Below are positions 21,134 through 53,210 of a stretch of DNA of 64,000 nucleotides, piece after piece; the stretch's first letter is position 1; the number at the start of each line of letters is the position of its first letter. The notes under the pieces are model-generated. The model did no database searches. It was not told the origin of the DNA and saw only the letters and a program-made list of their open reading frames with translations. The stretch is taken from positions 173,911-237,910 of the IMG/VR virus record IMGVR_UViG_3300028364_000014; one strand, 5' to 3'. A program made the position numbers and the translations under genes.

Positions 21134-22345
21134 CTAATATCTTTTATTTACTATTGCTTGATACCACGCTTTATGCCAGCTCCTATCTTTGTTCGCTTTA
21201 CTATTACAAGAACGACATATGGTTATTAAATTACTAGGTTTACAGTCTTTCTTGTCGTAATTAATGTGATGGATAGTTAAATCGTTTGGATTTTTAGAAT
21301 TACAGTACGGATTTAAACATTTATTTCCATCACGATTTCTTATATCTTTTTTATAATCTAAGTCTTTCCAGACTTCACAATAAAGCTCGAAGGATTTACC
21401 TCCTCTCCATTGTTGATTACCAGCACCAAAACTATCCAAGTGTGAACAAACCGGACACCTATGACCATCCGCCCAATCATAAAACCTAATTGTACCTTTA
21501 TGTCCTAAAGGGCATATATAGTTTAGCTTTGTTTTATTGTTTTTATATTCACCACTTAAAAGGGTATAACCCTCCAATTCAAAAAAACTTCTTACCTCTT
21601 TAATAGTTTTCTTCATTTTACCAGAACATTCTGGGCATCTATTACCTTGTTTCCAATTACCCCAAACCATACTACAGTGATGCCCTTTATCACAAACATA
21701 ATCAAGTTTAGAGTTATTGTTAATATATTCAGTGCTTAGTAATATGTAGCCTGCCTCCTTAAAAGAATTTTTTACAAGATCATAGGATGGTTTAACATTA
21801 TCACTACAATAAAAACATCTTTTACCTTGTTGCCAATCATTCCACATAATACTGTGATGATGCCCTTTTGGGCATTTAAAAATCAATTTAGTATGTGCAT
21901 TTTTATACTTTTCACTAAGTAAAATGTAACCTTCTTTTTTAAAAGAATTTTTAATAAAAGAAAGGCTATGTCTTCTGTTATTTATTGAGCACTTATTACA
22001 TCTACTACCAGACTTCCAATTTTTCCAACTTATCGAACCTACATGCCCATTAACACATCTATAATCTAACTTTGTGTGTGCATTTTTATAACACTCACTC
22101 AATAAAAAGTAGCCTTCTTTATTAAAGGCGGTTTTTATATCACGTATATCAGGCTTAATAACTCCTGAACAGTACGGACATCTATAACATGTTTGCCAAT
22201 TTGCCCAAGTAATACTGTGTTTATGTCCATTAGGGCATATATAATTTAATTTAGTGTGAGCATTTACATACTCCTCACTAAGGAGGGTATAGCCCTCCTT
22301 CTCAAAAGATTTTTTAACAAAACTATATGTTAATTTTTTTGACAT
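21134..22345 (-). CDS. Zn-ribbon-repeat HNH endonuclease (5 repeats)
   Basis: Five ~60-aa EGY.LLS..Y.N...KL...C..GH...W....RC..C repeats; C-terminal IHHI...N...C..CN. Confidence 0.85.
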   Translation of the reverse strand: MSKKLTYSFVKKSFEKEGYTLLSEEYVNAHTKLNYICPNGHKHSITWANWQTCYRCPYCSGVIKPDIRDIKTAFNKEGYFLLSECYKNAHTKLDYRCVNGHVGSISWKNWKSGSRCNKCSINNRRHSLSFIKNSFKKEGYILLSEKYKNAHTKLIFKCPKGHHHSIMWNDWQQGKRCFYCSDNVKPSYDLVKNSFKEAGYILLSTEYINNNSKLDYVCDKGHHCSMVWGNWKQGNRCPECSGKMKKTIKEVRSFFELEGYTLLSGEYKNNKTKLNYICPLGHKGTIRFYDWADGHRCPVCSHLDSFGAGNQQWRGGKSFELYCEVWKDLDYKKDIRNRDGNKCLNPYCNSKNPNDLTIHHINYDKKDCKPSNLITICRSCNSKANKDRSWHKAWYQAIVNKRY

Positions 22346-22926
22346 TACTTATCAGTAGACCCAGAACCTCCAACCCTTGTAACATCGCTATTACAATTAT
22401 CTGATTCAAGGAACTTTTTGAATATACCTTGCACTACCGCATCACCTTTATTAAATACCCTAGTTCTATCACCGAAGTTCCAAAGAAAAATACCTATATT
22501 ACCATCATTTTTTACATTACTATAGTAATCACTATCAATAATTCCTACAATATTTTTAATCCTTATCTCATTTTTATTTGCAAGAGATGACCTAGGGTAA
22601 ACCTCAAGTACTTCATCATCTAGCATATATGCTTTTACATCTGTCCAAATAAACGCACCTTCTCCAGGTAGAATTTCTACATCAGTGGGCAGAAAAAAAT
22701 CGTACCCTGCTGATTTAGCAGTACCTCTCAACGGAAGTGTAACTTCTTCACATACTGAATAAGCCTTCAGGTAATCTTTTGCTACTACTTCAAATCCTCT
22801 AGTTCTTTTTACTTCTTTCATAATTAATTTTCCTTTTACGTCCAAGTTAATTGTATTTGTACCCTGGTAATCTGTATATACTTCTATAGTCTTTTTTTCT
22901 ACTGAATTTTTAATACCTATAATCAT
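22345..22926 (-). CDS. dut: trimeric dUTPase (probable start 22821)
   Basis: SAGYDF, PRSS, GIIDSDY, VVQGIF, RVGGSGSTD. Confidence 0.92.
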   Translation of the reverse strand: MIIGIKNSVEKKTIEVYTDYQGTNTINLDVKGKLIMKEVKRTRGFEVVAKDYLKAYSVCEEVTLPLRGTAKSAGYDFFLPTDVEILPGEGAFIWTDVKAYMLDDEVLEVYPRSSLANKNEIRIKNIVGIIDSDYYSNVKNDGNIGIFLWNFGDRTRVFNKGDAVVQGIFKKFLESDNCNSDVTRVGGSGSTDK

Positions 22927-23998
22927 ATCGTCTATACAATAGCGCTTGATACCAAGACTTATGCCAGTTCCTGTCTGTATTTGCTTTAGAGTTACAAGAA
23001 CGGCACACCGTAATTAAATTACTAGGCTTGCAGTTCTTTTTATTATAATCAATGTGGTGAATTGTTAGGTCGTTTTTATTCGATGAATTACAATATGGAT
23101 TCAAACATTTATTATCATCCCTATTTCTTATATCCTGTTTGTATTCTTTGTCTTTCCAGGCTTCACAATAAGGTTCGAAGGATTTTCCACCTTGCCAATT
23201 AGGGTGCCCTGAACCACATCTAGTTATTGATAGGTTTATACCTTTACAGGTAGGGCACCTATAACCAGTTCTCCAATTACCCCAAGTAATACTATGTCCG
23301 TGCCCTTCAGAACAAACATACTCAAGTTTAATATGTGCATTTTCATACTTTTTACTTAATAAGATATAACCTTCTTTTTTAAACTCCTCTTTTATATATT
23401 CAATTGTTTTTTTATTATTACCAACACAATAAGGACATCTACAACCTGATACCCAATCCCTATAAGTGATACTATGAGAGTGCTTATTAGGACATATGTA
23501 ATCAAGTTTAGTACTGCTATTTTTATACTCCTCACTCAGAAGAATGTACCCCTCTTTTTCTAAAGAATTCCTAACTGTATCAAAACTCGGCTTCAAGTTA
23601 CCATGACAGTAGTAACAACGGTTTCCCGAAGCCCAATCATCCCATCTTATTGAGTGTTTATGCCCTTTAGGACAAATATATTCTAGTTTTTGTTTATTAT
23701 TTTTATAAACAGTAGTTAATAAAGTGTACCCTTCATTATAGAAAGCCTCTCTTATCTTATCTAATGACAGTTTTCTCTTATCGAAGTTACAAAACCTACA
23801 CCTATGTCCTAATAACCAATTACCCCAAGTAATACTATGATAATGACCTCTGGGACACCTATAATCAAGTTTGTTGGTATACCCCTCGTATTCAGTACTA
23901 AGTAAGGTGTATCCTTCTTTTTTAAAATACTCTTTAATGAGTGTAATATTGTACTTCTTATTAGCCATACTATTCCTGGGGTGCACCACATTTAGCAC
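22910..23998 (-). CDS. Zn-ribbon-repeat HNH endonuclease (4 repeats)
   Basis: Same repeat and C-terminal nuclease domain as 21134-22345. Confidence 0.85.
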   Translation of the reverse strand: MLNVVHPRNSMANKKYNITLIKEYFKKEGYTLLSTEYEGYTNKLDYRCPRGHYHSITWGNWLLGHRCRFCNFDKRKLSLDKIREAFYNEGYTLLTTVYKNNKQKLEYICPKGHKHSIRWDDWASGNRCYYCHGNLKPSFDTVRNSLEKEGYILLSEEYKNSSTKLDYICPNKHSHSITYRDWVSGCRCPYCVGNNKKTIEYIKEEFKKEGYILLSKKYENAHIKLEYVCSEGHGHSITWGNWRTGYRCPTCKGINLSITRCGSGHPNWQGGKSFEPYCEAWKDKEYKQDIRNRDDNKCLNPYCNSSNKNDLTIHHIDYNKKNCKPSNLITVCRSCNSKANTDRNWHKSWYQALLYRRYDYRY

Positions 23999-26900
23999 AC
24001 ACTAATTTAGTCCCATAATGGGCATCATTTACAAACTCCATATCACAACACCCACATTCTTCACCATCAATTTTATTTTCACAAGATCCTTTTAACCAGC
24101 AAGGACCTAAAAGCGCATCAGTCTCCATAGTAATTTTACTAAAGTATTTACCAAAACCATCTATTAAAGAATTAGCTACAAGTTCTCTTACAGCATCTAC
24201 TTGATCATTTCTTACCTCTACAACTACTTCATCATGTACTGTTAATAAAAGTTTTGCATCATAATCACTAGCTTCTAACCTATTCACCGTCAAAATCATC
24301 GCTTCTTTAACAGTGTCGGCATTCGCACCTTGCACCCCTGCGTTTTTAGCCGCTCTTTCAACTGCACGTTGTTTAGTTACCCTATCTGGATGTCCATATG
24401 GGGGTATATTATAATATCTTTTTCTCCCACTTATAGTCTGCGAAAAACCATTTTTAACTGCACCCCGTGCCGCGTGCTCTAAATAAGTTTTAACCCCACT
24501 ATACCGTTCAAAATAAGTATTAATCATATTATCTGCTTCTTTTTCTTTTATTTTAAGTCTAGCTGCCAATCCATATTTTGATAGCCCATAACAATTATGA
24601 ACTACAAACCCATTGGCTGAAAAATACGGGTGCTCATTTACTGATATATCATATACTTTAGCAATACCAACCCTTTTAATGCTTTTAATATCTAAAGGAA
24701 TAATATTATTGGAGTAAATAAAATCTAAAAATTTATCTAATTTGTGCAGTCTTTTAATACATATATTTCCTATAGCATTATTAGTGTATTTACTACAATT
24801 ATATAGTGTATCATAATAAACCCTGTTAGACTTTAAATCACTAGGGATAGATTTAATCATTTTATTTAATATCTTAGATTGATTACGTAATGAATAAGAA
24901 GACTCGTTATATTTACTTTTTACTTTATATTTATTATTTTTGTAAGCCGTTACAAAACCGATATCGTTAATAAATTTTTGCCTAAACTTATTGGTAATTA
25001 TGTCTAATGTATAATATAACTCTCCCGGATAATTTTTTCTTGTTTCTTTTAAAATAGAAGAAACATAACCAAAATTTAAAAACATTAATTGGATATCCTT
25101 TATAAGGGCTATAGATTTACTACTGTATTGAATTTTTACTGTATTACCATTTTTCTTTATAGTACCATCACCCTCCATTAACCAACGTAAAAACATTACT
25201 TGCACATCTTTTTTACTACATTTTACACACTCCGGTACACATACTGAATCTGTTTTTAATTTCTCAGAGTACTTAAAAATACTATACAACCATTCACAAA
25301 ATAATACTGAGTTAATACTATATTGTATTTTTTCAGCACTACTCACTCTTGAAAATCTAGTACTAAACAATTTAACAAATAGTTTATCTATATTTTGTAT
25401 GAATTCTGAAGACGCTTTTTTAGAAAAACAAAAAGACACTAAACTATATTTATCCCTACCTCTAACTTTTATTAAAGAACCTTCTGAAACAAACAGCCCT
25501 AAGAAGGCCGCCCAATCTTTAGTTAGGTATTTAGGTAAATTAAAGTGCTTATAATTCGTATTTTTTTGCACATCAAATTTATCATACTTATATAAACTAT
25601 TATTAAATAAATTAGAATTATTTTTTATACAAAGTTGCTCTGTACTAATATCAATATCTTTTAATTTTTTATCTACATAGTTCCCCTCCTTATCAATAAC
25701 CTTCATTACATGATCTAAGGTAGTTTTTAATGTATATCCAAATTGGGTTTCAATTTCGAATACTTCTTTTTTGCCCATATATCTATGAGCTTTTACACTA
25801 TTAGACCCTTTATCGTGAGATACCACATCACCTATTTCTACGTCTTTAATTGCTTTAATCCCACTATCCGTGATAATCTCAGTATCTCCATGAATACAAA
25901 GACCAAAATTAATTGCTTTAGCCTTACTTCTACTATCATGCTTAACTTCCTCTATAGGAATACTAAATACTTCAGAAGCAGTTCTAGTATGTAAGTCGAT
26001 CCCATGAGCATAACACTCAATAAAAACAGGATCTTCTGAAAGATTACCAAGAATCCTAAGCTCGGCACCAGACATATCTGCAGTAACTAAACTATACCCT
26101 GGCTTAGCGATAAAACAACTTCTAAATCTTTGTTTCTTTGGTATATTCTGTAAATTTGGAGCACTAGAACTCATACGCCCAGTTTGTACCATCTGCCTAA
26201 AACGAGTATGAAGTCTACCAGTTAAAGGATGAATCTTTTCTAGCAACGTTTCACCGTACGTAGACATTAATTTATTAAGTTTTCTATAAGAAAGAATTTT
26301 TTCAATAATAGGGATATCTTTATACTTTTCTAGTGAGCTGGCAGAAGTACTATCTAGTTTTACCCCTTGAGTTCTTAGTGCTTTTAATAATTGGGAAGGG
26401 CTATCTATATTAACAACAGGTATACCAAATAATATATTTTGTCCATGGTCAGTAGATAATAACTGATTGATGTCTTCTTGAGCCTCATCACGTTCTTGCT
26501 CAATATCTTTCATCATTATTCGCCACTTATCTATATCTAATGTTATCCCATTTAACTCCATCTCACACATTGGTTTAGTAAACTCAAACTCTAATCTACA
26601 AACATTATCAAATCCTTCCGCGTGTATACGAGGTAATTGTAATTCTCTAATTAAAGCAAGAATCGCAACATCATTAGCAGCGTATTCAATCTGGTAAGGT
26701 TTAAACACCTGATTATAATCCTGAAAAGTTCCGCCAGGCTCTTTAGCCATAGAAAGACCTAAATATTTTTTAACTAGGTCCTTCAAACTAGCTCCCTTCG
26801 CATTAACTCCTAAATTAAATAACTGCTCTACCAGCATAGTATCATAAATATTCTCAAGATAGTACCCAGCGTGTACCTTTAACATTTTCATATCAAATAC

Positions 26901-27200
26901 AGCATTCTGTAATAATTTAAGTATCTTAGGATTATTAAGAACTGGTGCCAATTGGTCAAGATGTACAGTTGAATGTTCTGTGTCACTTCTCACATCAAAA
27001 ACAAATGACTTATTTGGAATACCTATTTGTACTAAAACAATCTTCTTTGTATAAGGGTCAAAACCTGTTGTTTCTGTATCTACCTCTATCATAGGATGTC
27101 TAAGAATCTCAGCTATTACTGAGGCTACATCCTCTGCCCTAGTAATATAAGCAAAGTTCGGCTTAGGTAGAAAAAATTCTTCTACATCAAAAGTACTCAT
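23970..27200 (-). CDS. polA: family A DNA polymerase (3'-5' exonuclease plus polymerase) with intein
   Basis: VDTETTG, RMSSSAPNLQNIP, ADMSGAELR, KAINFGL|CYG, TVHDEV. Confidence 0.93.
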   Translation of the reverse strand: MSTFDVEEFFLPKPNFAYITRAEDVASVIAEILRHPMIEVDTETTGFDPYTKKIVLVQIGIPNKSFVFDVRSDTEHSTVHLDQLAPVLNNPKILKLLQNAVFDMKMLKVHAGYYLENIYDTMLVEQLFNLGVNAKGASLKDLVKKYLGLSMAKEPGGTFQDYNQVFKPYQIEYAANDVAILALIRELQLPRIHAEGFDNVCRLEFEFTKPMCEMELNGITLDIDKWRIMMKDIEQERDEAQEDINQLLSTDHGQNILFGIPVVNIDSPSQLLKALRTQGVKLDSTSASSLEKYKDIPIIEKILSYRKLNKLMSTYGETLLEKIHPLTGRLHTRFRQMVQTGRMSSSAPNLQNIPKKQRFRSCFIAKPGYSLVTADMSGAELRILGNLSEDPVFIECYAHGIDLHTRTASEVFSIPIEEVKHDSRSKAKAINFGLCIHGDTEIITDSGIKAIKDVEIGDVVSHDKGSNSVKAHRYMGKKEVFEIETQFGYTLKTTLDHVMKVIDKEGNYVDKKLKDIDISTEQLCIKNNSNLFNNSLYKYDKFDVQKNTNYKHFNLPKYLTKDWAAFLGLFVSEGSLIKVRGRDKYSLVSFCFSKKASSEFIQNIDKLFVKLFSTRFSRVSSAEKIQYSINSVLFCEWLYSIFKYSEKLKTDSVCVPECVKCSKKDVQVMFLRWLMEGDGTIKKNGNTVKIQYSSKSIALIKDIQLMFLNFGYVSSILKETRKNYPGELYYTLDIITNKFRQKFINDIGFVTAYKNNKYKVKSKYNESSYSLRNQSKILNKMIKSIPSDLKSNRVYYDTLYNCSKYTNNAIGNICIKRLHKLDKFLDFIYSNNIIPLDIKSIKRVGIAKVYDISVNEHPYFSANGFVVHNCYGLSKYGLAARLKIKEKEADNMINTYFERYSGVKTYLEHAARGAVKNGFSQTISGRKRYYNIPPYGHPDRVTKQRAVERAAKNAGVQGANADTVKEAMILTVNRLEASDYDAKLLLTVHDEVVVEVRNDQVDAVRELVANSLIDGFGKYFSKITMETDALLGPCWLKGSCENKIDGEECGCCDMEFVNDAHYGTKLVCAKCGAPQE
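24594..25898 (-). mobile_element. intein (435 aa) with LAGLIDADG endonuclease in PolA motif B
   Basis: Starts CIHGD; LFVSEG and LMEGDG blocks; ends NGFVVHN followed by C. Confidence 0.92.
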
Positions 27201-27203
27201 AAG

Positions 27204-38759: not shown

Positions 38760-39394
38760 ATTTTTATCCTTATTTTTTTATATTTATCAATTATATCCGT
38801 AGCGTAAATACACTTTTTCAGCCCCACTAAATTAGCCTTTATAGGATCAGTTAATAAGGGTTGAACTGCCAGCCAAGGCATCAGTCCGAGAATAAATACC
38901 TCATTACATAATAAATCATGTACATAAATAAACGCTGTTAGTGCCTCTAGCTCCTTATTTTTAAACAATGAGTCTTCTCCATACTTATTATGGAGATTGG
39001 ATTTTTGATAAGTCCAAGAAGGGTTGTCATTACCTGTATAAATTAAAGTAGATTTACTGCATGTTTTTATATGTATGCCAGGAAAAGTACTTTTTGGGTA
39101 TGGTAAGTCACAAGACCAACTTTTCTTACCAACAGGAAGCACTGTTAAATCAGGAGCCGCACTTGGATAGCCGAGCTTTTTTTCCAAATATTCGGCCACA
39201 ATAAACTCTCCAACTTTACCAATTACAATATCGTGGTGTGCTTTTAACGCTCTTCTTTCATTTTTATAATAAGTTTTACTTTGTAAACTCGCACTGGCAA
39301 ACCTACGTGATTTTTCTACATAGTCATTAAATTTTAATTTATCTACCGTATATGGGTCTAAAAATAATACAGTGTTATCGCTATAACAATACAT
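38756..39394 (-). CDS. PD-(D/E)xK-like hypothetical nuclease
   Basis: GKVGEFIV..YL...PD...HIKT. Confidence 0.45.
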   Translation of the reverse strand: MYCYSDNTVLFLDPYTVDKLKFNDYVEKSRRFASASLQSKTYYKNERRALKAHHDIVIGKVGEFIVAEYLEKKLGYPSAAPDLTVLPVGKKSWSCDLPYPKSTFPGIHIKTCSKSTLIYTGNDNPSWTYQKSNLHNKYGEDSLFKNKELEALTAFIYVHDLLCNEVFILGLMPWLAVQPLLTDPIKANLVGLKKCIYATDIIDKYKKIRIKI

Positions 39395-39401
39395 AATTCC
39401 C

Positions 39402-40241
39402 TTAAAAATTACTTATAAGTAGTTCTGTTTTAAAATTACGGGCTGTGTTTATAGAGTAATTTATATTATTAATAATTTCTATATTTGCCCAACCCATATA
39501 CAACGAACTTATTTCTTCACAATTATCGTAAGACAAGGTCCAAAAATGCTTAGTGTTTTTTAAAGAGTCAGCCAATCTTATATGATCTTGATAATTAAAC
39601 CCACACTGATATAACTCTTGCCCCTTAACAAAATAAGGTGGGTCTAAGTACAACAAAGCAGTAACTTCGTCATCAGTAATCAACTCAGAAAAATCCAAAG
39701 ACGAACATTTTATATGTTTGTTTTTAAATAATGAATTTAATTTATTAATATTTTTAGATAAATGCCCTGGGGACCATCTACAATCTATTTTATATTTAGA
39801 TTTCTGTTCTTTTCCGCCTAAAGGACCTCCGGATTTAGTTCCTAGTCCTGAAAAAGAAAGTTGATGAATAGTTAATTTCTTAAACCCATACAGTAACCTT
39901 TCTTCGTTGGTCAAGTCATTAAATTTTATATCTTCCAATAGTTGTTTCTTAGCAGTATAAAAATAATCCACAGAAGGGGTAAACTTCTGTATCAATTCTA
40001 TTAACCCGATAGGGTTATTTATAACAGTAAACCACAAACAAGCTATCCCAAAATCAAAATCATTTATCCAAAAACTATTTATACCTGATATAGTGAGTAA
40101 CTCAGTGGTAATTTTTCCACCACCTAAAAAAGGTTCCCTGTATTCAATTATTGTATCATCCTTGCTCAATCCTTCACATAACTTACTAAGTATCTGGTCC
40201 CTTAGTTTAGCTTTACCTCCTGGGTATCTAAAAAACGACAT
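39402..40241 (-). CDS. Dam-like (D12 class) N6-adenine DNA methyltransferase
   Basis: RYPGGK, EPFLGGG, INDFD, YLDPPY, LSYD, ELLISN. Confidence 0.9.
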   Translation of the reverse strand: MSFFRYPGGKAKLRDQILSKLCEGLSKDDTIIEYREPFLGGGKITTELLTISGINSFWINDFDFGIACLWFTVINNPIGLIELIQKFTPSVDYFYTAKKQLLEDIKFNDLTNEERLLYGFKKLTIHQLSFSGLGTKSGGPLGGKEQKSKYKIDCRWSPGHLSKNINKLNSLFKNKHIKCSSLDFSELITDDEVTALLYLDPPYFVKGQELYQCGFNYQDHIRLADSLKNTKHFWTLSYDNCEEISSLYMGWANIEIINNINYSINTARNFKTELLISNF

Positions 40242-40245: not shown

Positions 40246-41364
40246 TTAAATATCCTTTATTTCAGTAATAATTTTATCTGCTATAACTTCCCAAGAAAAA
40301 TTCTCTTTAATATAATTCTTTAGGGTCATTCCTTTCTCTTTTGCTTTATTTTGATTTTCATATACATACTTCATTTTGTTAGCCCCGTCTAATACATCAG
40401 GCTCAGCCCATAACTGTGTTCCATCATACCACGGACTCCAAGGCATGCTATGTACGGGCGTCAACATATGGTTTACTAGATAACTATTGTCTTCTTTTGC
40501 ATACTCTGTTGCGCCGCCAAATCCGGTAACTACGATTGGATTACCAGCAGCTCCAGCAGTAAAACTGGAGAGTCCAAAACCTTCACCCCTATCTAAAGAC
40601 ACATAACAATCACCCCTAGTATGTAAAGAGGTTATTTCATCCTCAGACAGCATATTACCAATAAGAACCATCTTAGGAAAATCAGACATAGGCATATTAT
40701 ACTTTAGAGATTTGATCATTCTAATCACACCTTCTTTTTGCTGATCCGAGTAGTCATTACCGTATGTTTTTAAAACCAGTACTACATCTTTATTACCATT
40801 AAATGCGTGGTAATAAGCCCTTATGAGTGCTTGAGGGCACTTTCGTTCAGTCCACTGACAGATATTATAAAAAACAAAATCAGTGTCTTTTACACCAGCA
40901 ATTTTAAAAGAATCAAAAGAATCAAAAGCTTTAGTACTAATTCCGTGAGGAACTACCCCTATCGGAATAGTCACACCACTATCTTTAAATATCTCCCTAT
41001 TCCACTCACAGCCTACTAATACTTTATCAACAGAATTATTTATAAAAGGCGTCCAATCAGAATGTAACTTAGTAGTCTCCCAAATTGTAAACCCACAATT
41101 TATTTTACCCACTTGTCTATACTTAGACCAAAATTCTGGAGTAGTGTGTATAAAATTAATATTATATAGAATTGAATTTTCAACTAAACTTTTTAATAGT
41201 TTACCATCTTCTCCTAAGTCTGGCTTGCTGTTTTCAAAAGAAATAGGATTGATAGTAATAGGCACACCGGCTTGGTGTAACGCTAGTATATTACCCCTAC
41301 ACGCTTTACCATAACCGCTTGAATCAAAAACCGGTCCTGTATATCTAATTCCTGTTATATCCAT
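40246..41364 (-). CDS. GT4 (GT-B) glycosyltransferase
   Basis: SGYGKA, PHG, RGEGFGL...A..G.P. Confidence 0.85.
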   Translation of the reverse strand: MDITGIRYTGPVFDSSGYGKACRGNILALHQAGVPITINPISFENSKPDLGEDGKLLKSLVENSILYNINFIHTTPEFWSKYRQVGKINCGFTIWETTKLHSDWTPFINNSVDKVLVGCEWNREIFKDSGVTIPIGVVPHGISTKAFDSFDSFKIAGVKDTDFVFYNICQWTERKCPQALIRAYYHAFNGNKDVVLVLKTYGNDYSDQQKEGVIRMIKSLKYNMPMSDFPKMVLIGNMLSEDEITSLHTRGDCYVSLDRGEGFGLSSFTAGAAGNPIVVTGFGGATEYAKEDNSYLVNHMLTPVHSMPWSPWYDGTQLWAEPDVLDGANKMKYVYENQNKAKEKGMTLKNYIKENFSWEVIADKIITEIKDI

Positions 41365-43377: not shown

Positions 43378-44418
43378 TTAATAATTATAATTATATCGTT
43401 TATTTAATACCGCCCGATACCAAGCTTTGTGCCAGTTTCTATCTTTATTGGCCTTAGAATTACACGAACGGCATACTGTAATTAAATTTGACGGACTACA
43501 ATTCTTTTTATTATAATCAACATGATGTATTGTTAAATCATTTGGATTTTTAGAATTACAGTATGGGTTTAAACATTTATTTCCATCTCTATCACGAATG
43601 TCTTGTTTGTATTCTTGGTCTTTCCAAGCTTCACAGTAAGGTTCAAAGGATATTCCACCTTTCCAAGAGTTATTACCAGAACCAGATATCCTAATAGACC
43701 AACAAGTAGGACATCTATATCCAGTTTTCCAATCACTCCATGTAATATAATGCACATGACCAAAAGAACATCTATAACTCAACTTGGTTTTATTATTTAC
43801 ATAATTTTTACTCAGGAGGACATATCCCTCCTTTTCAAATTCATTTTTAATATAATATATATCGTGTCTAACATTTCCTGCACAATACTTGCACCTATAT
43901 CCTTGCTTAAAATTACCAAACGTCATAGAAGTTTCATGACCATTAGGGCATACACACTCCAATTTAGTATTAATATTTACATACACATTAGATTTTAATA
44001 TATAACCTTCTAATTTAAAAGCAAGTTTAACATCTTCTATAGTAGATTTCCCTTGTCCAGTACAATAAGGGCATCTATGTCCTGTTGACCAATTAAACCA
44101 AGTAGTACCGTGTTCGTGCCCATTTGGGCAAGTATAATTAAGTTTTTGTCTATTATTTATATACTCTTCACTAAGTAAAGTGTACCCCTCATCTTCAAAA
44201 GATTTTTTTATAAATTCTATATGTAATTTTATATTTCCAGCACACGAAGGGCATCTATGATTTGCTGACCAATTTTGCCATGTAATATTATGACGATGAC
44301 CCTCAGGACAAATATATTTCAGCTTTGTTTTCGAATTAACATACTCACTACTTAATAATTCATAACCCTCCTTCTCAAAACTTCCCTTAACAAATTCATA
44401 GGTTAACTTTTTTGGCAT
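43378..44418 (-). CDS. Zn-ribbon-repeat HNH endonuclease (4 repeats)
   Basis: Same family as 21134-22345. Confidence 0.85.
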   Translation of the reverse strand: MPKKLTYEFVKGSFEKEGYELLSSEYVNSKTKLKYICPEGHRHNITWQNWSANHRCPSCAGNIKLHIEFIKKSFEDEGYTLLSEEYINNRQKLNYTCPNGHEHGTTWFNWSTGHRCPYCTGQGKSTIEDVKLAFKLEGYILKSNVYVNINTKLECVCPNGHETSMTFGNFKQGYRCKYCAGNVRHDIYYIKNEFEKEGYVLLSKNYVNNKTKLSYRCSFGHVHYITWSDWKTGYRCPTCWSIRISGSGNNSWKGGISFEPYCEAWKDQEYKQDIRDRDGNKCLNPYCNSKNPNDLTIHHVDYNKKNCSPSNLITVCRSCNSKANKDRNWHKAWYRAVLNKRYNYNY

Positions 44419-47689: not shown

Positions 47690-48015
47690 TAGTCTTCTCC
47701 TTTTATTATAATAAATGTGTCCACAAAAACTTCAGTCCAGTACTTTTTATCGGGTCCATTACAGTGCCTACACTTCCCATTAAAAGAACTCTCTTCGATA
47801 TGTCCGTGCAATTTTATGTACGAATTTTTAGGTACTTCATCCAACGCATCGGCTAAATCATTCCAAGCTGCTATTTTTATATATTGATAAGTATTATCTG
47901 GCGTAGGTATAGCCAAACTTCCTTTAAATAAACTAGTATTGTATTGACCAACCTGCTGTAACTTAGGTCTTGTTATCTTACCTTGTAGAATTACAAAATT
48001 TTCACCTTGTGGCAT
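47689..48015 (-). CDS. ssb: single-stranded DNA-binding (OB-fold) protein
   Basis: NFVILQGKI...P...AW..LA...K...I.L.G...TEV. Confidence 0.7.
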   Translation of the reverse strand: MPQGENFVILQGKITRPKLQQVGQYNTSLFKGSLAIPTPDNTYQYIKIAAWNDLADALDEVPKNSYIKLHGHIEESSFNGKCRHCNGPDKKYWTEVFVDTFIIIKGED

Positions 48016-48050
48016 TATTCGTCTCCTTTAATTAATCTTAATTATAGTAT

Positions 48051-48078
48051 AATATAGTACATTTTATGGATTTGTCAA
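48051..48078 (-). promoter_or_regulatory. promoter TTGACA-N16-TATATT, identical over 36 bp to the copy at 9653-9688
   Basis: 48049-48084 equals 9653-9688. Confidence 0.8.
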
Positions 48079-48086
48079 GTAAATCT

Positions 48087-48938
48087 TTAGGCTTTATTAC
48101 ACCTAAGTTCATAATACCCACAGCCAGGTAATTTATGCACCTTTTTATGGCACGTTTTACAAAGTGTGACGGTATTAGTTACATCATTGCCCAAACGTAG
48201 ATTTTGGGCATATCCTTCAATATGATGACAGTGTAGTGGTGCATTTTCTTGACTAGCTCCGCAGATCTGACATCTCCAATTGTCTCGTTCAAAACACATT
48301 TGTCTAACTAAAGGGTTGACTTCACGAGATGTTACTTTTTTAAAACCTTTAGGGTACTTCTTTTGATTGTATATTGGGCAAGACGTTTTACAACTATCTG
48401 AACAATAAATAAACACATCACCAAGTTTAACACTATTCAATGCATTAATCCTGTGCCTTACTGCTATATTAGTAGGTATAAAATACTTACCACAATACTT
48501 ACATTTAACTTCTAAAGAGATACCATCTTTAGAAAGTCTGGGTGATTCAGCTACTGTTAGCTTTTTACCATAAGTCTCATACACAGCCTTAGAAAGTCTA
48601 TAGTCATCAGCCATTTTAATAATTTTTTCTTTATTAGCTTGATAATATTTCTTTTTATACTTGGTATAAACTTCTTTATTATTCTTATAATGTTGTTTAA
48701 TACGAATAAGTATTTTTTCTTTGTTTTCTTGTCTATATATTTTTGACTGTAGAGCTATTGACCTCTTATTCCTTTCATAATAACGTTTACTATATTCCCT
48801 CATTTCTTCTCTTTTTTCTTTCCTGTCTTCTTTTCTACACTCTTTACATCTATTAGCAATACCAGAACTACGTGACTTATTTTTATTAAATTCATTTTCA
48901 TCCTTATGAATTTTACACTTCGAACATCTTTTTCTCAT
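48087..48938 (-). CDS. HNH homing endonuclease (paralog of 9679-10542)
   Basis: SREVNPLVRQMCFERDNW.CQICG...LHCHHIEGY...LCKTCH..VH. Confidence 0.85.
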   Translation of the reverse strand: MRKRCSKCKIHKDENEFNKNKSRSSGIANRCKECRKEDRKEKREEMREYSKRYYERNKRSIALQSKIYRQENKEKILIRIKQHYKNNKEVYTKYKKKYYQANKEKIIKMADDYRLSKAVYETYGKKLTVAESPRLSKDGISLEVKCKYCGKYFIPTNIAVRHRINALNSVKLGDVFIYCSDSCKTSCPIYNQKKYPKGFKKVTSREVNPLVRQMCFERDNWRCQICGASQENAPLHCHHIEGYAQNLRLGNDVTNTVTLCKTCHKKVHKLPGCGYYELRCNKA

Positions 48939-49988
48939 TCAAACGGTTTTCCTCCTCATATAACTCTCTAGGTAGTAAAATATTTGTTCATCAGTTAAAT
49001 CGGCTGGATCAAGCCCTTTGCCTTGTTTATCTACCTCTGTTATTATTTCTGCATATATAGGTAACTTACCTTCTAGTAGATCTATAGACCGCCCAATAGC
49101 GGAAACCCCAGCCACATCACCATCATAAAATAAAGCTACCCCTTTATGCGCGTATGAACATAATAAATCAGCTTGTCCTGTGGTTATACCTGCGCCCATA
49201 CAAGCCACTACATTCTTAATACCTAAACTATACAGTCTCCAAACACTCTTAAACCCCTCCACTATAATAATAGGCACCTCTGCCCCAAGCTCTTTAATAT
49301 TATGTAAGTTATAAAGCACGGTATTTTTGTCGAATCCTGGAGTAAGTTTATATTTTTGGTCTGTATTGATAGGGTTAGCCCGTATATCTCTTAAACTATA
49401 CGCGACTAATAAACTCTTATCATCTCTAATAGGTATAATATCTCTTACAAGCCCATCACGATCAGTATACCCACCAGCTATTTCAAAAAAATCTAGAGTG
49501 TCTACACTAAATCCATCCTCTATAAAAAAAGAAGATCTGTATGGTTTATAATATTTTAATTTAATCTCATCTACTACAGAAGGGCGCTCAGTTGAATTAC
49601 CGTAAGTATTAATAAAATCTTTTCTTTCTTTTTGTTCTTTAAATCGTATCAAATCAGTTTTATTAATGCTTTTACTACCAGTTAAATCCTCTAAATAATC
49701 TAATGCGTCCATAAACCCGCAGTCATTTACTGATCTTACTAAACCAAACATATCATTTCCATAAGCCTTCTGACACCCGTGAGTGAAACAAACCCAAGTT
49801 TTTAAATCCTTATTAAGTCTAAAACTAGTAGTATTATCACCACCATGTATTATACAAGCGGCTCTTAATTCCTTAGAAGTTTCTCTCGCAACTGTAAATC
49901 CAAGCTGACTAACTAGATAAGCTGGATCAATTAATTGTTTAACTGTGGCTACTCTGTCTTTAAAACTACTGTCTTTAGGAAAGCTCAT
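48939..49988 (-). CDS. dnaG: DNA primase (CHC2 Zn finger plus TOPRIM)
   Basis: CIIHGGDN...CFTHGC; IVEG; YDGD.AG. Confidence 0.88.
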   Translation of the reverse strand: MSFPKDSSFKDRVATVKQLIDPAYLVSQLGFTVARETSKELRAACIIHGGDNTTSFRLNKDLKTWVCFTHGCQKAYGNDMFGLVRSVNDCGFMDALDYLEDLTGSKSINKTDLIRFKEQKERKDFINTYGNSTERPSVVDEIKLKYYKPYRSSFFIEDGFSVDTLDFFEIAGGYTDRDGLVRDIIPIRDDKSLLVAYSLRDIRANPINTDQKYKLTPGFDKNTVLYNLHNIKELGAEVPIIIVEGFKSVWRLYSLGIKNVVACMGAGITTGQADLLCSYAHKGVALFYDGDVAGVSAIGRSIDLLEGKLPIYAEIITEVDKQGKGLDPADLTDEQIFYYLESYMRRKTV

Positions 49989-51390
49989 CTAGTACCTCCG
50001 TATTATACCTAGCCTCATCAGCATCTTCATGGTTGGTTACCTCATCCCCTGAAGTTATAAAGTATTGATCTGGTGCTTTAACTTCTCTAATATCTAGATG
50101 CTGTTTAAAAAACCAGTAACCTATACCTTCTGGACCAGTACTTCCACCTCGTCTAGTATCTTTAATGGTAAGCTTATAGTTACCACACTCAAGCCCACCC
50201 ATCTTACGCTCTTCTTCTGTACGCGCGCCCCATAAAGCAATAACATCACCAAAACGCGCTATTCTATCACTATCGGCAATATCATTTTGCCTATTGAGCT
50301 GTACCGCAGTCAGTGCAGGTATATCCAGAGAACCCGCTAAATCCTTAAGTTTTGTAGTAATATCACCAAGTAACTGATGTTCTTTCCTATTACCATCAGT
50401 CGTAGATAAATCAGGTTCTTTAATGTAGTCAAATACAATTAATCCAATGTTTTCTTTAATTTTCATTTTTTTACACATAGCCACTACCTTATCTACACTA
50501 TACCCTGGCATATACATATGAAATAATTTACCATTAGCAGTCAAATTTTGAGCATATTTCATCTTAGAATACTGCTCAGGGTTCCATCCTCCGTGCTTAA
50601 CGTCTCTTTCTTTAACACCAGACAGTTTAGATAAAGCCCTAGTTCGCCATTCACTAAAAGTTAACTCAGTATCAATATATAAAACAGGTACATGCTCATT
50701 GAACGCGGCGTGAATGGCTATATTAGTTAGATAAGCACTCTTACCCATCTTCTTTCTTGCTGCTATTACAGTTAAAGTTCCTGGTATTAATCCATCTATT
50801 TGTCTGTCTAAAATAGGAAATCCCGAAGATAAGCCGGTCATAGTTATTTTTGAATTAAGCCTATCCTCCATAAATTTATCTAAACCATTACCTAAATCTA
50901 CAGGGTCTCCATTATTTTTAAAGCCAGTGGTCATATCTAACATACTTGTTTCTACATGACCAATCAAATCATTTCCAGAGACGCCGTCTTTAGCATTACC
51001 CTCTACTAAAGTTATATGCTGTTTAAGAGCTACGTATAACTTAAATTTAGTACTTGCCTCGGTAATATTATCTAAATACACATTAAAATTGGAATCCGAA
51101 GTAACAATATTTCCTATGGATTGCAGATATCCGACACCACCTAGCATGTCTAGAACTTCGTTATTCTGAGCTTGGGTAATGACCATTGCCAAATCAATAG
51201 AAGTTATCCCCCTGTTAACTAAATCCTTCATCAAAGCAAATAATAACTGATGCGGTTCAGAAAGAAAATCAAACTCATTTATTTTAGACGAAAGATCATA
51301 AAAATAGTCTACACTTTTAAAACAGTATGATAGTACAATCCTTTCATCCGCCGGTCTACAAAATTTATTTTTTATTTCGTCTATATTCAA
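49975..51390 (-). CDS. dnaB: replicative DNA helicase DnaB-like
   Basis: G...LD...G..PG.L.VIAARKKMGKS, IDTE, VFDYI, QLNR. Confidence 0.9.
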   Translation of the reverse strand: MNIDEIKNKFCRPADERIVLSYCFKSVDYFYDLSSKINEFDFLSEPHQLLFALMKDLVNRGITSIDLAMVITQAQNNEVLDMLGGVGYLQSIGNIVTSDSNFNVYLDNITEASTKFKLYVALKQHITLVEGNAKDGVSGNDLIGHVETSMLDMTTGFKNNGDPVDLGNGLDKFMEDRLNSKITMTGLSSGFPILDRQIDGLIPGTLTVIAARKKMGKSAYLTNIAIHAAFNEHVPVLYIDTELTFSEWRTRALSKLSGVKERDVKHGGWNPEQYSKMKYAQNLTANGKLFHMYMPGYSVDKVVAMCKKMKIKENIGLIVFDYIKEPDLSTTDGNRKEHQLLGDITTKLKDLAGSLDIPALTAVQLNRQNDIADSDRIARFGDVIALWGARTEEERKMGGLECGNYKLTIKDTRRGGSTGPEGIGYWFFKQHLDIREVKAPDQYFITSGDEVTNHEDADEARYNTEVLDELS

Positions 51391-51392
51391 TA

Positions 51393-51851
51393 TTATTTCC
51401 TCTCTGCTCTTATAGCGTATAATTCGTTCTCTCTTCTTGTCAATTCTCTTTTAAATGTAGCAATATACTCACTTATCGTTTTATCAATTCCATCTAATTT
51501 TATTAACTCTAACTTTAATTCGTCTATTTGATCATTTAGCCTAGATAAATCCACATTAGTACTAATAAGATAGTCTGTAGCGGCAGATTTAGTCTTATAT
51601 TGTTTTAGTACTTCTTTGTCGAGAACTATAGCTATAGAGGACTCAAAGAGTTTATTTTTTTTAGCAATTTCAGCTTTAGTTTGATTTTGTTCAGACTTAA
51701 AATAAATTAAAAACTGAGCTAGTGCAATTGAGTACATACTAATAGTTGCCCCATCTAGATTATTAAGACTTCTAGGGTTAAAATTCCAAATCTCATCAAC
51801 AAGGGTGTTATTTATTTTTATATTTTGAAAGGATGTTATTGCTTGGTCCAT
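51393..51851 (-). CDS. coiled-coil hypothetical protein (possibly UvsY-like)
   Basis: Helical, heptad-rich, lies between RecA and DnaB. Confidence 0.4.
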   Translation of the reverse strand: MDQAITSFQNIKINNTLVDEIWNFNPRSLNNLDGATISMYSIALAQFLIYFKSEQNQTKAEIAKKNKLFESSIAIVLDKEVLKQYKTKSAATDYLISTNVDLSRLNDQIDELKLELIKLDGIDKTISEYIATFKRELTRRENELYAIRAERK

Positions 51852-51859
51852 ACTACCTC

Positions 51860-52162
51860 CTATGATGCTTTATCATCACCATCTATTCTTTCTTCGTATG
51901 ATCTGTGGTCATGTTTACCAGTGCAATAATAGTCCCATTCCACTACTTTATTAGTTTTAGGATCAATTACAGGGCAGTAATGATTCTCCATTGGTACCGC
52001 TACCCCGTTCACATAATCAGCTTGTATACAAAACTTACTAAGGTCGCAATATTTACTATCCCCGAGGATTGTTCCATCCCTGAGACAACAGAAGTCTTTA
52101 CAGTCTTTATTGTACTTAGTAGAATCAGACGTAATTAAAGTATTTACATCGTATTTATTCAT
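51860..52162 (-). CDS. Cys-rich hypothetical protein
   Basis: 100 aa with seven Cys. Confidence 0.5.
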   Translation of the reverse strand: MNKYDVNTLITSDSTKYNKDCKDFCCLRDGTILGDSKYCDLSKFCIQADYVNGVAVPMENHYCPVIDPKTNKVVEWDYYCTGKHDHRSYEERIDGDDKAS

Positions 52163-52166
52163 AACA

Positions 52167-53210
52167 TTATCCTTTATCGTTAAAATATCTTCTATATATA
52201 ACAGCCTGATACCAGGCTTTATGCCATGTTCTATCTTTATTGGCCTTAGAATTACACGAACGGCACACAGTTATTAAATTATTTGGTTTACAGTTCTTTT
52301 TATTATAATCAATGTGATGGATGGTTAGATCCCTTGAATCAGGTGAGTCACAGTAGGGGTTTAAACATTTATTCCCGTCTCTATTTCTTATATCTTTTTT
52401 ATATTCTAAATCTTTCCAAGCTTCGCAATACGGTTCAAAAGAAATACCTCCTTTCCAAGACGGATGATTTTCTCCCATATTATTAATACAGTAACAAGTA
52501 GGACATCTAACCCCTCTAGCCCAATCAGTCCATATTATACTATGCTTGTGACCGTTATGACAAATATATTTTAACTTAGTGTGATTATTAATATATTTAG
52601 TACTTAGTAATATGTAGCCCGCAGACTCGAACGAATTTCTCACATCTTTAATAGTTTTTTTTATTTTTTTAGAGCAATAAGGACATCTCCTACCAATGCC
52701 CCATTTACCAAATGATATGGAATGTCTGTGCCCTTTAGGACAAACATACTTTAACTTAGTTCTATTATTTATATACTCTTTACTAAGTAATATATACCCT
52801 TCTTTCTCAAAAGAATATTTTACAAAATCATATGTGGGTTTTATATTTCCATTACAATACCAACATCTTTTACCATAATGCCAATCAGTCCAAGTAATAG
52901 AATGCTTATGCCCCTTAGAACAAATATAATCTAACTTAGTGTAAGCGTTTTTATACTCATTGCTAAGAAGTACATAACCCTCTTTCTCAAAAGATTTTCT
53001 AACTTGTTCTATATCTAATTTAGTATTTCCGTAACAATAAGGACATCTATTACCTAAGGTATTCCAACAGTTCCAAGATACCCTATGTATATGTCCTTTA
53101 GGACAAAGATAATCTAGCTTAGTCTTATTATTTTTATACTCCTTACTAAGGAGGGTGTACCCCTCCTTTTCAAAAGATTTTTTAATAAAATCATAGGTTA
53201 ATTTCTTCAT
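52167..53210 (-). CDS. Zn-ribbon-repeat HNH endonuclease (4 repeats)
   Basis: Same family as 21134-22345. Confidence 0.85.
   Translation of the reverse strand: MKKLTYDFIKKSFEKEGYTLLSKEYKNNKTKLDYLCPKGHIHRVSWNCWNTLGNRCPYCYGNTKLDIEQVRKSFEKEGYVLLSNEYKNAYTKLDYICSKGHKHSITWTDWHYGKRCWYCNGNIKPTYDFVKYSFEKEGYILLSKEYINNRTKLKYVCPKGHRHSISFGKWGIGRRCPYCSKKIKKTIKDVRNSFESAGYILLSTKYINNHTKLKYICHNGHKHSIIWTDWARGVRCPTCYCINNMGENHPSWKGGISFEPYCEAWKDLEYKKDIRNRDGNKCLNPYCDSPDSRDLTIHHIDYNKKNCKPNNLITVCRSCNSKANKDRTWHKAWYQAVIYRRYFNDKG

What the first reader, a model, noticed from the sequence alone, without database searches (positions are those of the whole stretch)
21134..53210. Four-member endonuclease family with a conserved nuclease and variable ~60-aa Zn-ribbon arrays
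Seen: genes at 21134, 22910, 43378 and 52167 have 5, 4, 4 and 4 repeats fused to a near-invariant HNH/HNN domain (37 bp identical at 43437-43473 and 52229-52265). Repeat scaffolds are conserved while residues around the W..W..G.RC segment vary. Several overlap neighbouring start or stop codons. Inference: modular DNA readers where repeat number and sequence set target specificity, reminiscent of ZF/TALE logic.
Basis: partly seen in the sequence, partly recalled or inferred. Interest (0 to 1): 0.62.

Follow-up and report, generated by a model that had tools for sequence, protein, structure and literature searches.

The report
CapR-repeat HNH homing endonuclease family
A large lake-water phage carries at least seven related selfish nuclease genes (four in this window). 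Each joins a conserved HNH DNA-cutting domain to a string of 3-5 zinc-binding "CapR" repeats that probably choose the DNA target. This is a clear example of a gene type already described in phages, not a new kind of system.

Summary
Four minus-strand genes encode 5, 4, 4 and 4 tandem 60-aa zinc modules followed by a C-terminal HNH (H-N-N type) nuclease, and the 37-bp identity is exact.

The repeats are the CapR homology domain (Pfam PF21817). This is a DNA-binding zinc domain known from the PLE satellite repressor CapR and from phage homing endonucleases.

The whole 238-kb phage genome holds seven such genes. Public metagenomes hold over 900 relatives, and the best 120 carry 2-7 repeats.

The genes sit tightly packed between replication and nucleotide-metabolism genes: RNR, dUTPase, PolA, an exonuclease, and two genes downstream of RecA. 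Related phages have empty sites for two of them and positional orthologs for two. This fits free-standing homing endonuclease genes.

Synonymous sites between paralogs are saturated, while the HNH core stays 69-85% identical. So "near-invariant" reflects purifying selection on old copies, not recent duplication. Identical patches of 59 and 77 bp show occasional gene conversion between paralogs.

Variable residues cluster on one β-hairpin/helix stretch of each repeat. Whether they set specificity is untested.

The "modular reader" idea was already published for CapR/DUF723/DUF4379 arrays (Barth et al. 2023).

Verdict: real, well described, and a new member of a known kind.

The parts
21134..22345 (-). 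W1: 403-aa CapR x5 + HNH homing endonuclease gene, between dUTPase and the RNR large subunit
   Evidence: Array aa 1-300 = 21446-22345; linker plus HNH = 21134-21445.
22910..23968 (-). W2: 352-aa CapR x4 + HNH gene, between PolA and dUTPase. The ORF is open to GTG 23998, but ATG 23968 matches the paralog N-termini.
   Evidence: Array = 23246-23968; linker plus HNH = 22910-23245. Positional orthologs are found in L031 and L032.
43378..44418 (-). W3: 346-aa CapR x4 + HNH gene, between a PD-(D/E)XK exonuclease and a GT4 glycosyltransferase
   Evidence: Array = 43702-44418; linker plus HNH = 43378-43701. The site is empty in relatives L018 and L020. Folded.
52167..53210 (-). W4: 347-aa CapR x4 + HNH gene, between orf126 (downstream of recA) and a 100-aa ORF
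   Evidence: Array = 52494-53210; linker plus HNH = 52167-52493. The site is empty in L026-L028 and holds an ortholog in L025. A 99% allele, P0061, differs at 3 residues, all in the array.
43437..43473 (-). 37-bp stretch identical to 52229-52265, in the HNH helix coding region (CRSCNSKANKDR)
52229..52265 (-). 37-bp stretch identical to 43437-43473
52878..52954 (-). 77-bp stretch in repeat 2 of W4 (about codons 86-111) that is identical to repeat 2 of out-of-window paralog B (genome 18237-19085). This is a gene-conversion patch inside the DNA-binding array. The window coordinates are computed from the codon positions.
   Evidence: The maximum under the synonymous-resampling null was 44 bp.
21281..21342 (-). 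59-bp stretch in the W1 HNH region (about codons 335-354) that is identical to out-of-window paralog A (genome 14868-15929). About 180 nt around it are about 90% identical. The window coordinates are approximate, computed from the codon positions.
   Evidence: Contigs break and word depth doubles here in four metagenome runs.

Best explanation
The four genes belong to a family of free-standing homing endonuclease genes, with seven members in this 238-kb lake/salt-lake phage.

Each protein has an N-terminal string of independently folded 60-aa CapR-homology zinc modules. Their zinc ligands are Cys-x3-His ... Cys-x2-Cys. A flexible 12-20-residue linker joins the array to a C-terminal zinc-stabilised HNH (His-Asn-Asn) nuclease.

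Inferred mechanism:
- The basic array binds a long, asymmetric DNA site in a related phage genome that lacks the gene. The site probably lies in or beside the adjacent conserved gene (PolA, dUTPase, RNR, the exonuclease or the recA region).
- The tethered HNH domain nicks or cuts nearby.
- Recombinational repair from the endonuclease-carrying genome copies the gene, and flanking markers, into the cut genome.

The exposed face of the β2-β3 hairpin and the following short helix (x-W-x-x-W-x-x-G-x-R-C) is hypervariable. It is the best candidate for base contacts. Conserved Lys/Arg residues (repeat positions 1, 8, 29 and 52) are candidates for backbone contacts.

Shown here: domain identities, the architecture, intact catalytic and zinc residues, intergenic placement, presence/absence among relatives, old age with purifying selection, and recombination patches between paralogs. 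Inferred: DNA binding by these particular arrays, their targets, nick versus double-strand cut, and homing itself.
For: Domains:
- Pfam CapR PF21817 matches all four proteins (E 3.5e-16 to 2.7e-10, 4-5 stretches each), and HNH PF01844 matches the C-terminus.
- In the genome search the HNH matches are over the curated cut-off in all seven copies.
- PHROG 559/681 'HNH endonuclease / endonuclease' match.
- H298, H299, N311, N320, N324 and the four Cys C282/C287/C316/C319 are invariant in 51 four-repeat members.
- The HNH part of the AlphaFold model matches the ScoMcrA HNH domain (Foldseek probability 1.0).

Structure and charge:
- Models are confident for each domain but not for the whole (pLDDT 85.7, pTM 0.36; single repeat pLDDT 85.3).
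- The arrays are basic (pI 8.8-9.6, net charge +9 to +27).

Context:
- Neighbours are RNR (with an intein), dUTPase, PolA (with an intein), a clamp loader, an exonuclease and recA.
- Junctions are tight or overlapping.
- Sites are empty in relatives for W3 (L018, L020) and W4 (L026-L028).
- Positional orthologs exist for W2 (L031, L032, which share a linker signature) and W4 (L025).
- W1 lies at a synteny break, where an RNR cassette is bounded by endonuclease genes.

Evolution:
- pS is 0.72 against pN 0.12 in the HNH core, and pN is 0.37 in the repeats.
- Identical patches of 77 bp and 59 bp exceed the null maximum of 44 bp.
- The family has 954 hits, with protein lengths clustering near 286, 346, 407, 467 and 526 aa.

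Literature:
- CapR binds DNA specifically and needs its four Cys residues (PMC8096241).
- CapR-type arrays in homing endonucleases are repetitive and recombine (PMC10448857).
- Hef-like homing endonucleases carry related zinc modules.
- Hef is reported to have endonuclease activity with cleavage sites near its own gene (as cited in PMC3322345).
Against: - There is no biochemical or expression evidence for any of these proteins.
- Contigs from four independent metagenome runs showed W1 and W2 present at 99% identity or more, with no joint that skips them. Contigs drop rare variants, so this is weak evidence.
- The W2 site is occupied in all three relatives found, and orthologs are as diverged as their neighbours. 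This could mean long vertical residence or a domesticated function rather than active homing.
- Hypervariable repeat residues are not conserved between positional orthologs, so they may simply be weakly constrained surface positions.
- The CapR repeat model has no convincing match to any solved DNA-binding fold (best Z 4.2).
Confidence: 0.8

Rival explanations
1. The genes are domesticated nucleases. They descend from homing endonucleases but are now kept for the phage's own benefit. Possible roles are excluding or degrading co-infecting relatives or satellites, degrading host DNA, or starting recombination-dependent replication. They would no longer move.
For: All seven copies are intact, their synonymous sites are saturated, and the nuclease is under strong purifying selection. 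Positional orthologs have persisted at the PolA and recA sites in phages whose neighbouring proteins share only 59-86% identity. There are precedents for CapR-type modules being reused, in PLE CapR and in origin-directed nucleases (PMC8096241, PMC10448857).
Against: The W3 and W4 sites are empty in relatives, and W1 lies at a synteny break. The genome also carries many unrelated selfish nucleases and inteins in the same module. Homing and exclusion of competitors are not mutually exclusive.
Confidence: 0.15
2. The repeat arrays are not sequence-specific DNA readers. They might act as spacers or molecular rulers (as the I-TevI zinc finger does), as generic DNA or RNA clamps, or as protein-interaction modules. 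Specificity would then lie in the HNH domain or the linker.
For: Variable residues are not conserved between positional orthologs. No solved DNA-binding fold matches the repeat. The I-TevI zinc finger mentioned in PMC8096241 acts, by my own knowledge, mainly as a distance determinant.
Against: CapR itself binds a defined promoter segment, and loses binding when its Cys residues are mutated (PMC8096241). The same type of array is fused to three unrelated nuclease folds: T5orf172, HNH and PD-(D/E)xK (PMC10448857). That is what a portable targeting module would look like. The HNH cores are too similar to explain seven different insertion sites.
Confidence: 0.12
3. The paralogs are recent duplicates homogenised by gene conversion, so the similarity of the nuclease domain would be a recombination artefact rather than the result of selection.
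For: Identical patches of 37, 59 and 77 bp occur between paralogs.
Against: Outside those patches, synonymous sites are saturated in the HNH core (pS 0.54-0.84, mean 0.72) while pN is 0.12. Overall DNA identity in the core is only about 77%.
Confidence: 0.03

Closest known systems
CapR-domain T5orf172 homing endonucleases of ICP1, T5-like and Vibrio phages (Netter 2021 PMC8096241; Barth 2023 PMC10448857)
   Same: The DNA-binding module is the same (CapR homology domain, often in tandem arrays). The genes are free-standing and sit next to essential genes such as RNR, polymerase and terminase. There is evidence for recombination between repeats and between paralogs. The 'beads on a string' specificity idea applies to both.
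   Different: The nuclease here is HNH, not T5orf172 (GIY-YIG-like). The zinc ligands are C-x3-H / C-x2-C rather than the CxxC...CxC reported for CapR. The arrays are more regular (60 aa each, 3-5 copies) and the gene family within one genome is larger.
Hef-like homing endonucleases (Hef of T4-like phage U5; Campylobacter phage CP30A, LIMEstone F-LimIII/VII/VIII/X)
   Same: The Campylobacter phage CP30A 'Hef-like' protein aligns with residues 18-240 of W3 (30% identity) and has DUF4379/CapR-like zinc modules. These genes are also free-standing and lie beside nucleotide-metabolism genes.
   Different: The Hef-like nuclease domain is PD-(D/E)xK-like (REase_MTES_1575), not HNH. This genome has one such gene outside the window (genome 21125-21991). 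I could not read the original Hef paper, so the domain make-up of U5 Hef itself was not checked.
Phage HNH homing endonucleases such as I-HmuI, I-BasI and T4 MobA-E
   Same: They use an HNH/HNN ββα-metal nuclease tethered to a separate DNA-binding region, and they are encoded free-standing or in introns next to conserved phage genes. Several are nickases (my own knowledge).
   Different: Their DNA-binding parts are NUMOD or helix-turn-helix modules, or a single zinc finger, and the HNH is often N-terminal. No sequence match to I-HmuI or any other solved HNH was found.
C2H2 zinc-finger arrays and TALE repeats
   Same: Tandem modules of constant length with a conserved scaffold and a localised set of variable, mostly polar residues. 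The module number varies between proteins.
   Different: There is no homology, the module is much larger (60 aa), no recognition code is known, and the repeats are far more divergent than TALE repeats (48% identity).

Membership tests
HNH (ββα-metal) endonuclease superfamily | Profile match to the HNH family over the curated threshold | tested here: met
   In the genome search, PF01844 scores 23.0-29.4 bits for all seven copies, above the 21.4-bit cut-off. In the whole-protein hmmscan, W4 scores 23.9 bits and W1-W3 score 20.5-21.1, just under the cut-off.
HNH (ββα-metal) endonuclease superfamily | Catalytic His, structural Asn, a final metal-binding His/Asn, and a CCCC zinc site | tested here: met
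   H298/H299, N311, N320/N324, and C282, C287, C316, C319 are invariant in 51 family members. The last catalytic position is Asn, giving the H-N-N variant.
HNH (ββα-metal) endonuclease superfamily | ββα fold | tested here: met
   The model shows strands 295-299 and 312-316 followed by helix 317-325. Foldseek matches the ScoMcrA HNH domain with probability 1.0 (E 4e-3, about 110-140 aligned columns).
HNH (ββα-metal) endonuclease superfamily | Metal-dependent DNA cleavage | not testable with these tools
   Needs a biochemical assay.
CapR homology domain (PF21817) | Profile match over the gathering threshold | tested here: met
   Whole-protein scores are 40.7-59.6 bits against a 24.2-bit cut-off, with 4-5 stretches per protein. 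The genome has 25 matches, all within the seven genes.
CapR homology domain (PF21817) | Four conserved zinc ligands in two pairs about 15-26 residues apart | tested here: met
   C-x3-H followed 14-15 residues later by C-x2-C is present in all 28 repeats. One ligand is His, where CapR is reported to have CxxC...CxC (PMC8096241).
CapR homology domain (PF21817) | Sequence-specific DNA binding | not testable with these tools
   Shown only for PLE CapR (PMC8096241). Here it is supported only by the basic charge of the arrays and by the fusion to nucleases.
Free-standing homing endonuclease gene | Stand-alone nuclease gene in an intergenic position beside conserved genes, not inside an intron or intein | tested here: met
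   See the neighbours and junctions. No Rfam intron family is found in the window.
Free-standing homing endonuclease gene | Presence/absence polymorphism at the same site in related genomes | tested here: met
   W3 is absent in L018 and L020. W4 is absent in L026-L028 and present in L025. W2 is present in both relatives that keep the PolA neighbourhood. W1 lies at a synteny break.
Free-standing homing endonuclease gene | Cleavage of the allele lacking the gene, followed by gene conversion | not testable with these tools
   Needs cleavage mapping and mixed-infection crosses. Contigs from four runs showed no allele lacking the gene, which is uninformative.
Hef-like homing endonucleases | CapR/DUF4379-type zinc modules plus a PD-(D/E)xK-like nuclease | tested here: not met
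   The zinc modules are shared, but the nuclease of the four window genes is HNH. The Hef-like architecture appears in genome ORF 21125-21991 and in phage CP30A.
T5orf172-CapR homing endonucleases | C-terminal T5orf172 / GIY-YIG-like nuclease | tested here: not met
   No T5orf172 or GIY-YIG match is found in the four proteins.
TALE-like one-repeat-one-base code | Near-identical repeats that differ at one or two specificity residues | tested here: not met
   Mean repeat identity is 48%, and at least 12 positions have entropy of about 2.8 bits or more.

The most novel reading that the evidence does not exclude
Each 60-aa CapR repeat reads a fixed short DNA subsite through the hypervariable face of its β-hairpin and short helix. 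Arrays of 2-7 repeats would then form a decipherable recognition code that can be recombined, and that phages shuffle by gene conversion to retarget a constant HNH cutter. This would be a third natural programmable protein-DNA code, beside zinc fingers and TALEs.
Probability: 0.2. Interest if true: 0.75.

Novelty: new member of a known kind. Interest (0 to 1): 0.36.

Why it matters
The CapR-type zinc module is among the commonest targeting domains of phage homing endonucleases. Yet no structure of it has been solved, no DNA complex exists, and no recognition rules are known.

This genome offers seven natural paralogs with the same nuclease but different arrays of 3-5 repeats. The wider family has more than 900 members with 2-7 repeats. 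Together they make a ready comparison set for working out how the module reads DNA and whether arrays can be re-engineered.

The locus is also a clean example of endonuclease genes marking the boundaries of gene exchange in a phage replication module. For genome annotation, these ORFs should be named CapR-repeat HNH homing endonucleases rather than hypothetical proteins.

Tried and rejected
- Megablast of the W1-W2 region against GenBank phages found no near relative.
- The dUTPase neighbourhood search mostly returned non-syntenic relatives. L001, L016, L017, L022-L024 and L030 are identical copies of the same phage from other assemblies, so they are not independent.
- Fold searches of the single CapR repeat against the PDB gave nothing convincing. 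The best VIA-align Z was 4.2 (trypanosome mitoribosome factors) and the best Foldseek E was 0.07. A profile search of PDB sequences gave no significant hit. The HNH tail has no close solved relative by sequence.
- Laying contigs of four metagenome runs on 20000-25900 found no joints that skip W1 or W2. Contigs cannot show rare alleles, so this is not evidence that such alleles are absent.
- Rfam found no group I/II intron or other RNA family in the window, so the genes are not intron-encoded.
- Promoter and terminator scans around W1/W2 gave nothing above the shuffles that could be interpreted. Several terminator-like hits are palindromes created by the CPxGH codons.
- Recent duplication or wholesale homogenisation is rejected by the saturated synonymous sites.
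- A test of whether variable residues are conserved between positional orthologs gave no support for conserved specificity.
- Failed calls: script error, repeated; timed out, repeated; Sandegren 2005 paper not held.
No alternative genetic code and no spliced model were used.
- The large representative protein search and the complex predictor were not used, because the family scans and the word search had already settled the identity.


Full report
**What is there.** The window is the last 64 kb of a 237,910-bp IMG/VR virus record. It has about 32% G+C and nearly all genes lie on the minus strand. W1 is 21134-22345 (403 aa). W2 is 22910-23998 as an open frame, but its likely start is ATG 23968 (352 aa), which aligns with the N-termini of the paralogs. 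W3 is 43378-44418 (346 aa) and W4 is 52167-53210 (347 aa).

Each protein has 5, 4, 4 or 4 tandem units of 59-61 aa, then a 12-20-residue linker and a roughly 91-aa HNH core. The 37-bp identity at 43437-43473 and 52229-52265 is exact and maximal.

**Domain identity.** The repeats match the Pfam CapR homology domain PF21817 (whole-protein E 3.5e-16 to 2.7e-10, 4-5 stretches each). The C-termini match HNH PF01844. In the genome-wide search the HNH matches are above the curated cut-off in every copy. PHROGs 559 and 681, annotated 'HNH endonuclease' and 'endonuclease', match strongly.

CapR is the capsid-operon repressor of the Vibrio cholerae satellite PLE. It binds a defined promoter segment, and a mutant with all four conserved cysteines changed to serine no longer binds. 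Its domain is shared with putative homing endonucleases of phage ICP1 (PMC8096241).

In the present repeats the four zinc ligands are Cys-x3-His and Cys-x2-Cys. The HNH part has invariant His-His, Asn, Asn/Asn and four Cys residues across 51 four-repeat family members, so it is an intact H-N-N type site.

**Family size.** The whole genome contains seven full members. All 25 CapR matches in the genome lie within these seven genes. The three members outside the window are at genome 14868-15929 (4 repeats), 18237-19085 (3 repeats) and 38954-39994 (4 repeats).

One further ORF, at genome 21125-21991, combines a CapR-like zinc module with a PD-(D/E)xK-like nuclease (REase_MTES_1575, below the cut-off).

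A word-based search of 5.8 billion proteins returned 954 relatives at E ≤ 1e-5. The best 120 are 48-63% identical to W3, and 91 of them align over at least 97% of its length. They carry 2-7 repeats, and their lengths cluster near 286, 346, 407, 467 and 526 aa. Almost none has a name.

Among sequenced phages, the array matches 289 records from Escherichia/Salmonella T5-like, Bacillus, Campylobacter, Lactococcus, Vibrio and cyanobacterial phages. They are variously annotated as HNH endonuclease, homing endonuclease, group I intron protein or Hef-like homing endonuclease.

**Structure.** AlphaFold2 with 51 homologs gives confident domains but no fixed arrangement between them (mean pLDDT 85.7, pTM 0.36). 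The lowest confidence is in the linker before the HNH domain.

A single repeat folds as follows (pLDDT 85.3):
- helix α1;
- a short strand;
- a β-hairpin whose turn carries the Cys and His ligands (CPxGH);
- a short helix α2 (W-x-x-W);
- the CxxC knuckle.

The HNH part matches the ScoMcrA HNH domain (Foldseek probability 1.0). The repeat has no convincing match among solved structures, either by fold (best Z 4.2) or by sequence profile. The arrays are basic (pI 8.8-9.6).

**Variation.** The 28 repeats of the genome average 48% identity. Repeats within one gene are no more alike than repeats from different genes (0.478 against 0.476). Only the first repeats tend to group together.

Across 490 repeats of the family, the scaffold F11, Y16, L18, L19, Y23, N25, K29, L30, Y32, C34, G37, H38, W44, W47, G50, R52, C53 and C56 is 83-100% conserved. 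Positions 6, 9, 27, 31, 39, 43, 45, 46, 48, 49, 51 and 55 reach about 2.8-3.4 bits of entropy and are mostly polar or charged residues.

From the alternation pattern, the variable residues occupy the exposed face of the β2-β3 hairpin and of α2. This is an inference, because model coordinates could not be inspected.

**Age and selection.** In the 91-aa HNH core, amino-acid identity is 69-85% (78-84% among the window copies) and DNA identity is about 77%. Synonymous sites are saturated (mean pS 0.72) and pN is 0.12. In the repeats pS is 0.67 and pN 0.37.

The paralogs are therefore old. The nuclease is held by purifying selection and was not recently copied, so 'near-invariant' overstates its conservation.

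Against a null that keeps the proteins and resamples synonymous codons, the 37-bp run is unremarkable family-wide (p about 0.07). Two other runs exceed the null maximum of 44 bp:
- A 77-bp identity lies inside repeat 2 of W4 and of paralog B, with flanks about 65% identical.
- A 59-bp identity lies within a roughly 180-nt, 90%-identical stretch of the HNH regions of W1 and paralog A.

These are gene-conversion patches, and one of them is inside the DNA-binding array.

**Genomic context.** The gene order is: GIY-YIG/NUMOD1 endonuclease (16394-17410) | RNR large subunit with a LAGLIDADG intein | W1 | dUTPase | W2 | family-A DNA polymerase with a LAGLIDADG intein | clamp loader. W3 lies between a GT4 glycosyltransferase and a PD-(D/E)XK exonuclease. 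W4 lies between a 100-aa ORF and orf126, which is next to recA.

Junctions are tight: W1/dUTPase overlap by 1 nt, W4/orf126 overlap as ATGA, and the W2 3' end overlaps the annotated dUTPase start by 17 nt. No intron RNA family is present in the window.

The genome has 18 HNH ORFs in all.

**Comparison with related phages.**
- Relatives with 52-66% identical neighbours have the exonuclease directly followed by the glycosyltransferase (L018, L020). The W3 site is empty there.
- Relatives L026-L028 have orf126 directly followed by the 100-aa ORF homolog. The W4 site is empty there.
- L025 (RecA 86% identical) has a four-repeat member at the W4 site that shares W4's C-terminal tail.
- L031 and L032 (PolA 59-65% identical) both have a four-repeat member directly after PolA. 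It shares with W2 a linker signature found in no paralog.
- In those two relatives the RNR cassette with W1 is not at this position, so W1 lies at a synteny break bounded by endonuclease genes.

Arrays of positional orthologs have diverged more (42-61% identity) than their HNH tails (68-76%). Their hypervariable positions are only 10-40% identical, against 17% for non-orthologs.

**Population data.** Near-identical DNA occurs in many lake-water and salt-lake metagenomes. In four runs the contigs cover W1-dUTPase-W2 at 99% identity or more, with no joint skipping a gene. Contigs break, and word depth doubles, at the conserved HNH stretches (about 21246-21352 and 22978-23027). This is expected for sequence shared between paralogs. 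A 99% allele of W4 (P0061) differs at three residues, all in the array.

**Interpretation.** The evidence fits free-standing homing endonuclease genes built as a CapR array plus an HNH nuclease. The inferred mechanism has three steps. The array binds a long site in a genome that lacks the gene. The tethered HNH domain nicks or cuts nearby. Recombinational repair then copies the gene in.

The same type of array is fused elsewhere to T5orf172 (PMC10448857) and to a PD-(D/E)xK-like nuclease in Hef-like genes. That argues the array is a portable targeting module. Whether the hypervariable residues or the repeat number set specificity remains untested. The ortholog comparison neither supports nor excludes it.

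**Novelty.** Barth et al. 2023 (PMC10448857, section 23) already report three points:
- Most T5orf172 homing endonucleases carry one or several CapR/DUF723/DUF4379 zinc domains.
- The authors interpret these as 'beads on a string' whose combination gives specificity.
- Repeats recombine within and between genes.

Hef-like endonucleases are annotated in T4-like and Campylobacter phages (PMC3296691, PMC3322345). The CapR-plus-HNH combination itself is already present in annotated phage genomes and in PHROG 559.

The finding is therefore a well-observed new member of a known kind, and a large and regular one. Its main value is as a natural comparison set for solving how the CapR module reads DNA.

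Noticed in passing
window 17456-21124 and 23970-27200: Both the RNR large subunit and the family-A DNA polymerase carry LAGLIDADG inteins (about aa 311-671 and 467-869). Relative L032 has an intein-less PolA. In four metagenome runs the contigs become divergent from about 24192 and leave the window sequence at 24657, near the intein's C-terminal junction. This suggests another PolA or intein allele, with a possible co-conversion tract, in the population.
   Followed up: partly
window 48087-48938 and 9679-10542: A second, unrelated HNH endonuclease family (283 and 287 aa, HNH at aa 223-269). The copy between primase and SSB is absent from the eight relatives whose fetched loci cover the primase-SSB junction (L018-L021 and L025-L028), so its site is empty there.
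   Followed up: partly
window 15369-17410: A GIY-YIG + NUMOD1 homing endonuclease (16394-17410) and a 341-aa ORF with a weak HNH match lie on the far side of RNR. The RNR gene is thus bracketed by endonuclease genes and is missing from this position in L031 and L032.
   Followed up: partly
window 53207-53587: orf126 is conserved in all seven relatives whose fetched loci extend past recA (L025-L028 and the identical-copy contigs), including the three that lack W4. It has a PD-(D/E)xK-like motif (E-V-Q-G-x-Q-H), matches PHROG 9084 'homing endonuclease' and positions 324-410 of PHROG 559, and overlaps the recA 3' end by 65 nt. It may be a stand-alone or domesticated nuclease domain.
   Followed up: partly
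genome C1:21125-21991 (L033:7126-7992), outside the window: A 288-aa ORF has one CapR-like zinc module and a REase_MTES_1575-like nuclease. The 744-aa 'Hef-like' endonuclease of Campylobacter phage CP30A has the same kind of architecture.
   Followed up: partly
genome C1:~40437-40985 (L034:2437-2985), outside the window: An ORF matches the Volactin actin-like family (Pfam PF25216, E 1.6e-34, profile positions 143-321). The phage therefore appears to encode an actin-like protein.
   Followed up: no
L014:6001-7493, L015:5486-7062 and L021:6304-8808: In distant relatives the dUTPase is split between residues 132 and 133 by about 1.1 kb, and the glycosyltransferase is split by about 1.15 kb. These are further insertions (intron, intein or endonuclease gene) in the same gene set.
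   Followed up: no
window 21499-21516 and 22222-22239: The terminator-like palindromes TATGTCC-nnnn-GGGCATA are the reverse complement of the codons for the CPxGH zinc knuckle. They are a by-product of the coding sequence rather than terminators.
   Followed up: no
genome C1:14000-14523 (L033:2-523), outside the window: A free-standing LAGLIDADG_2 endonuclease with a helix-turn-helix domain lies next to paralog A. With 18 HNH ORFs as well, the genome is unusually rich in selfish nucleases.
   Followed up: no
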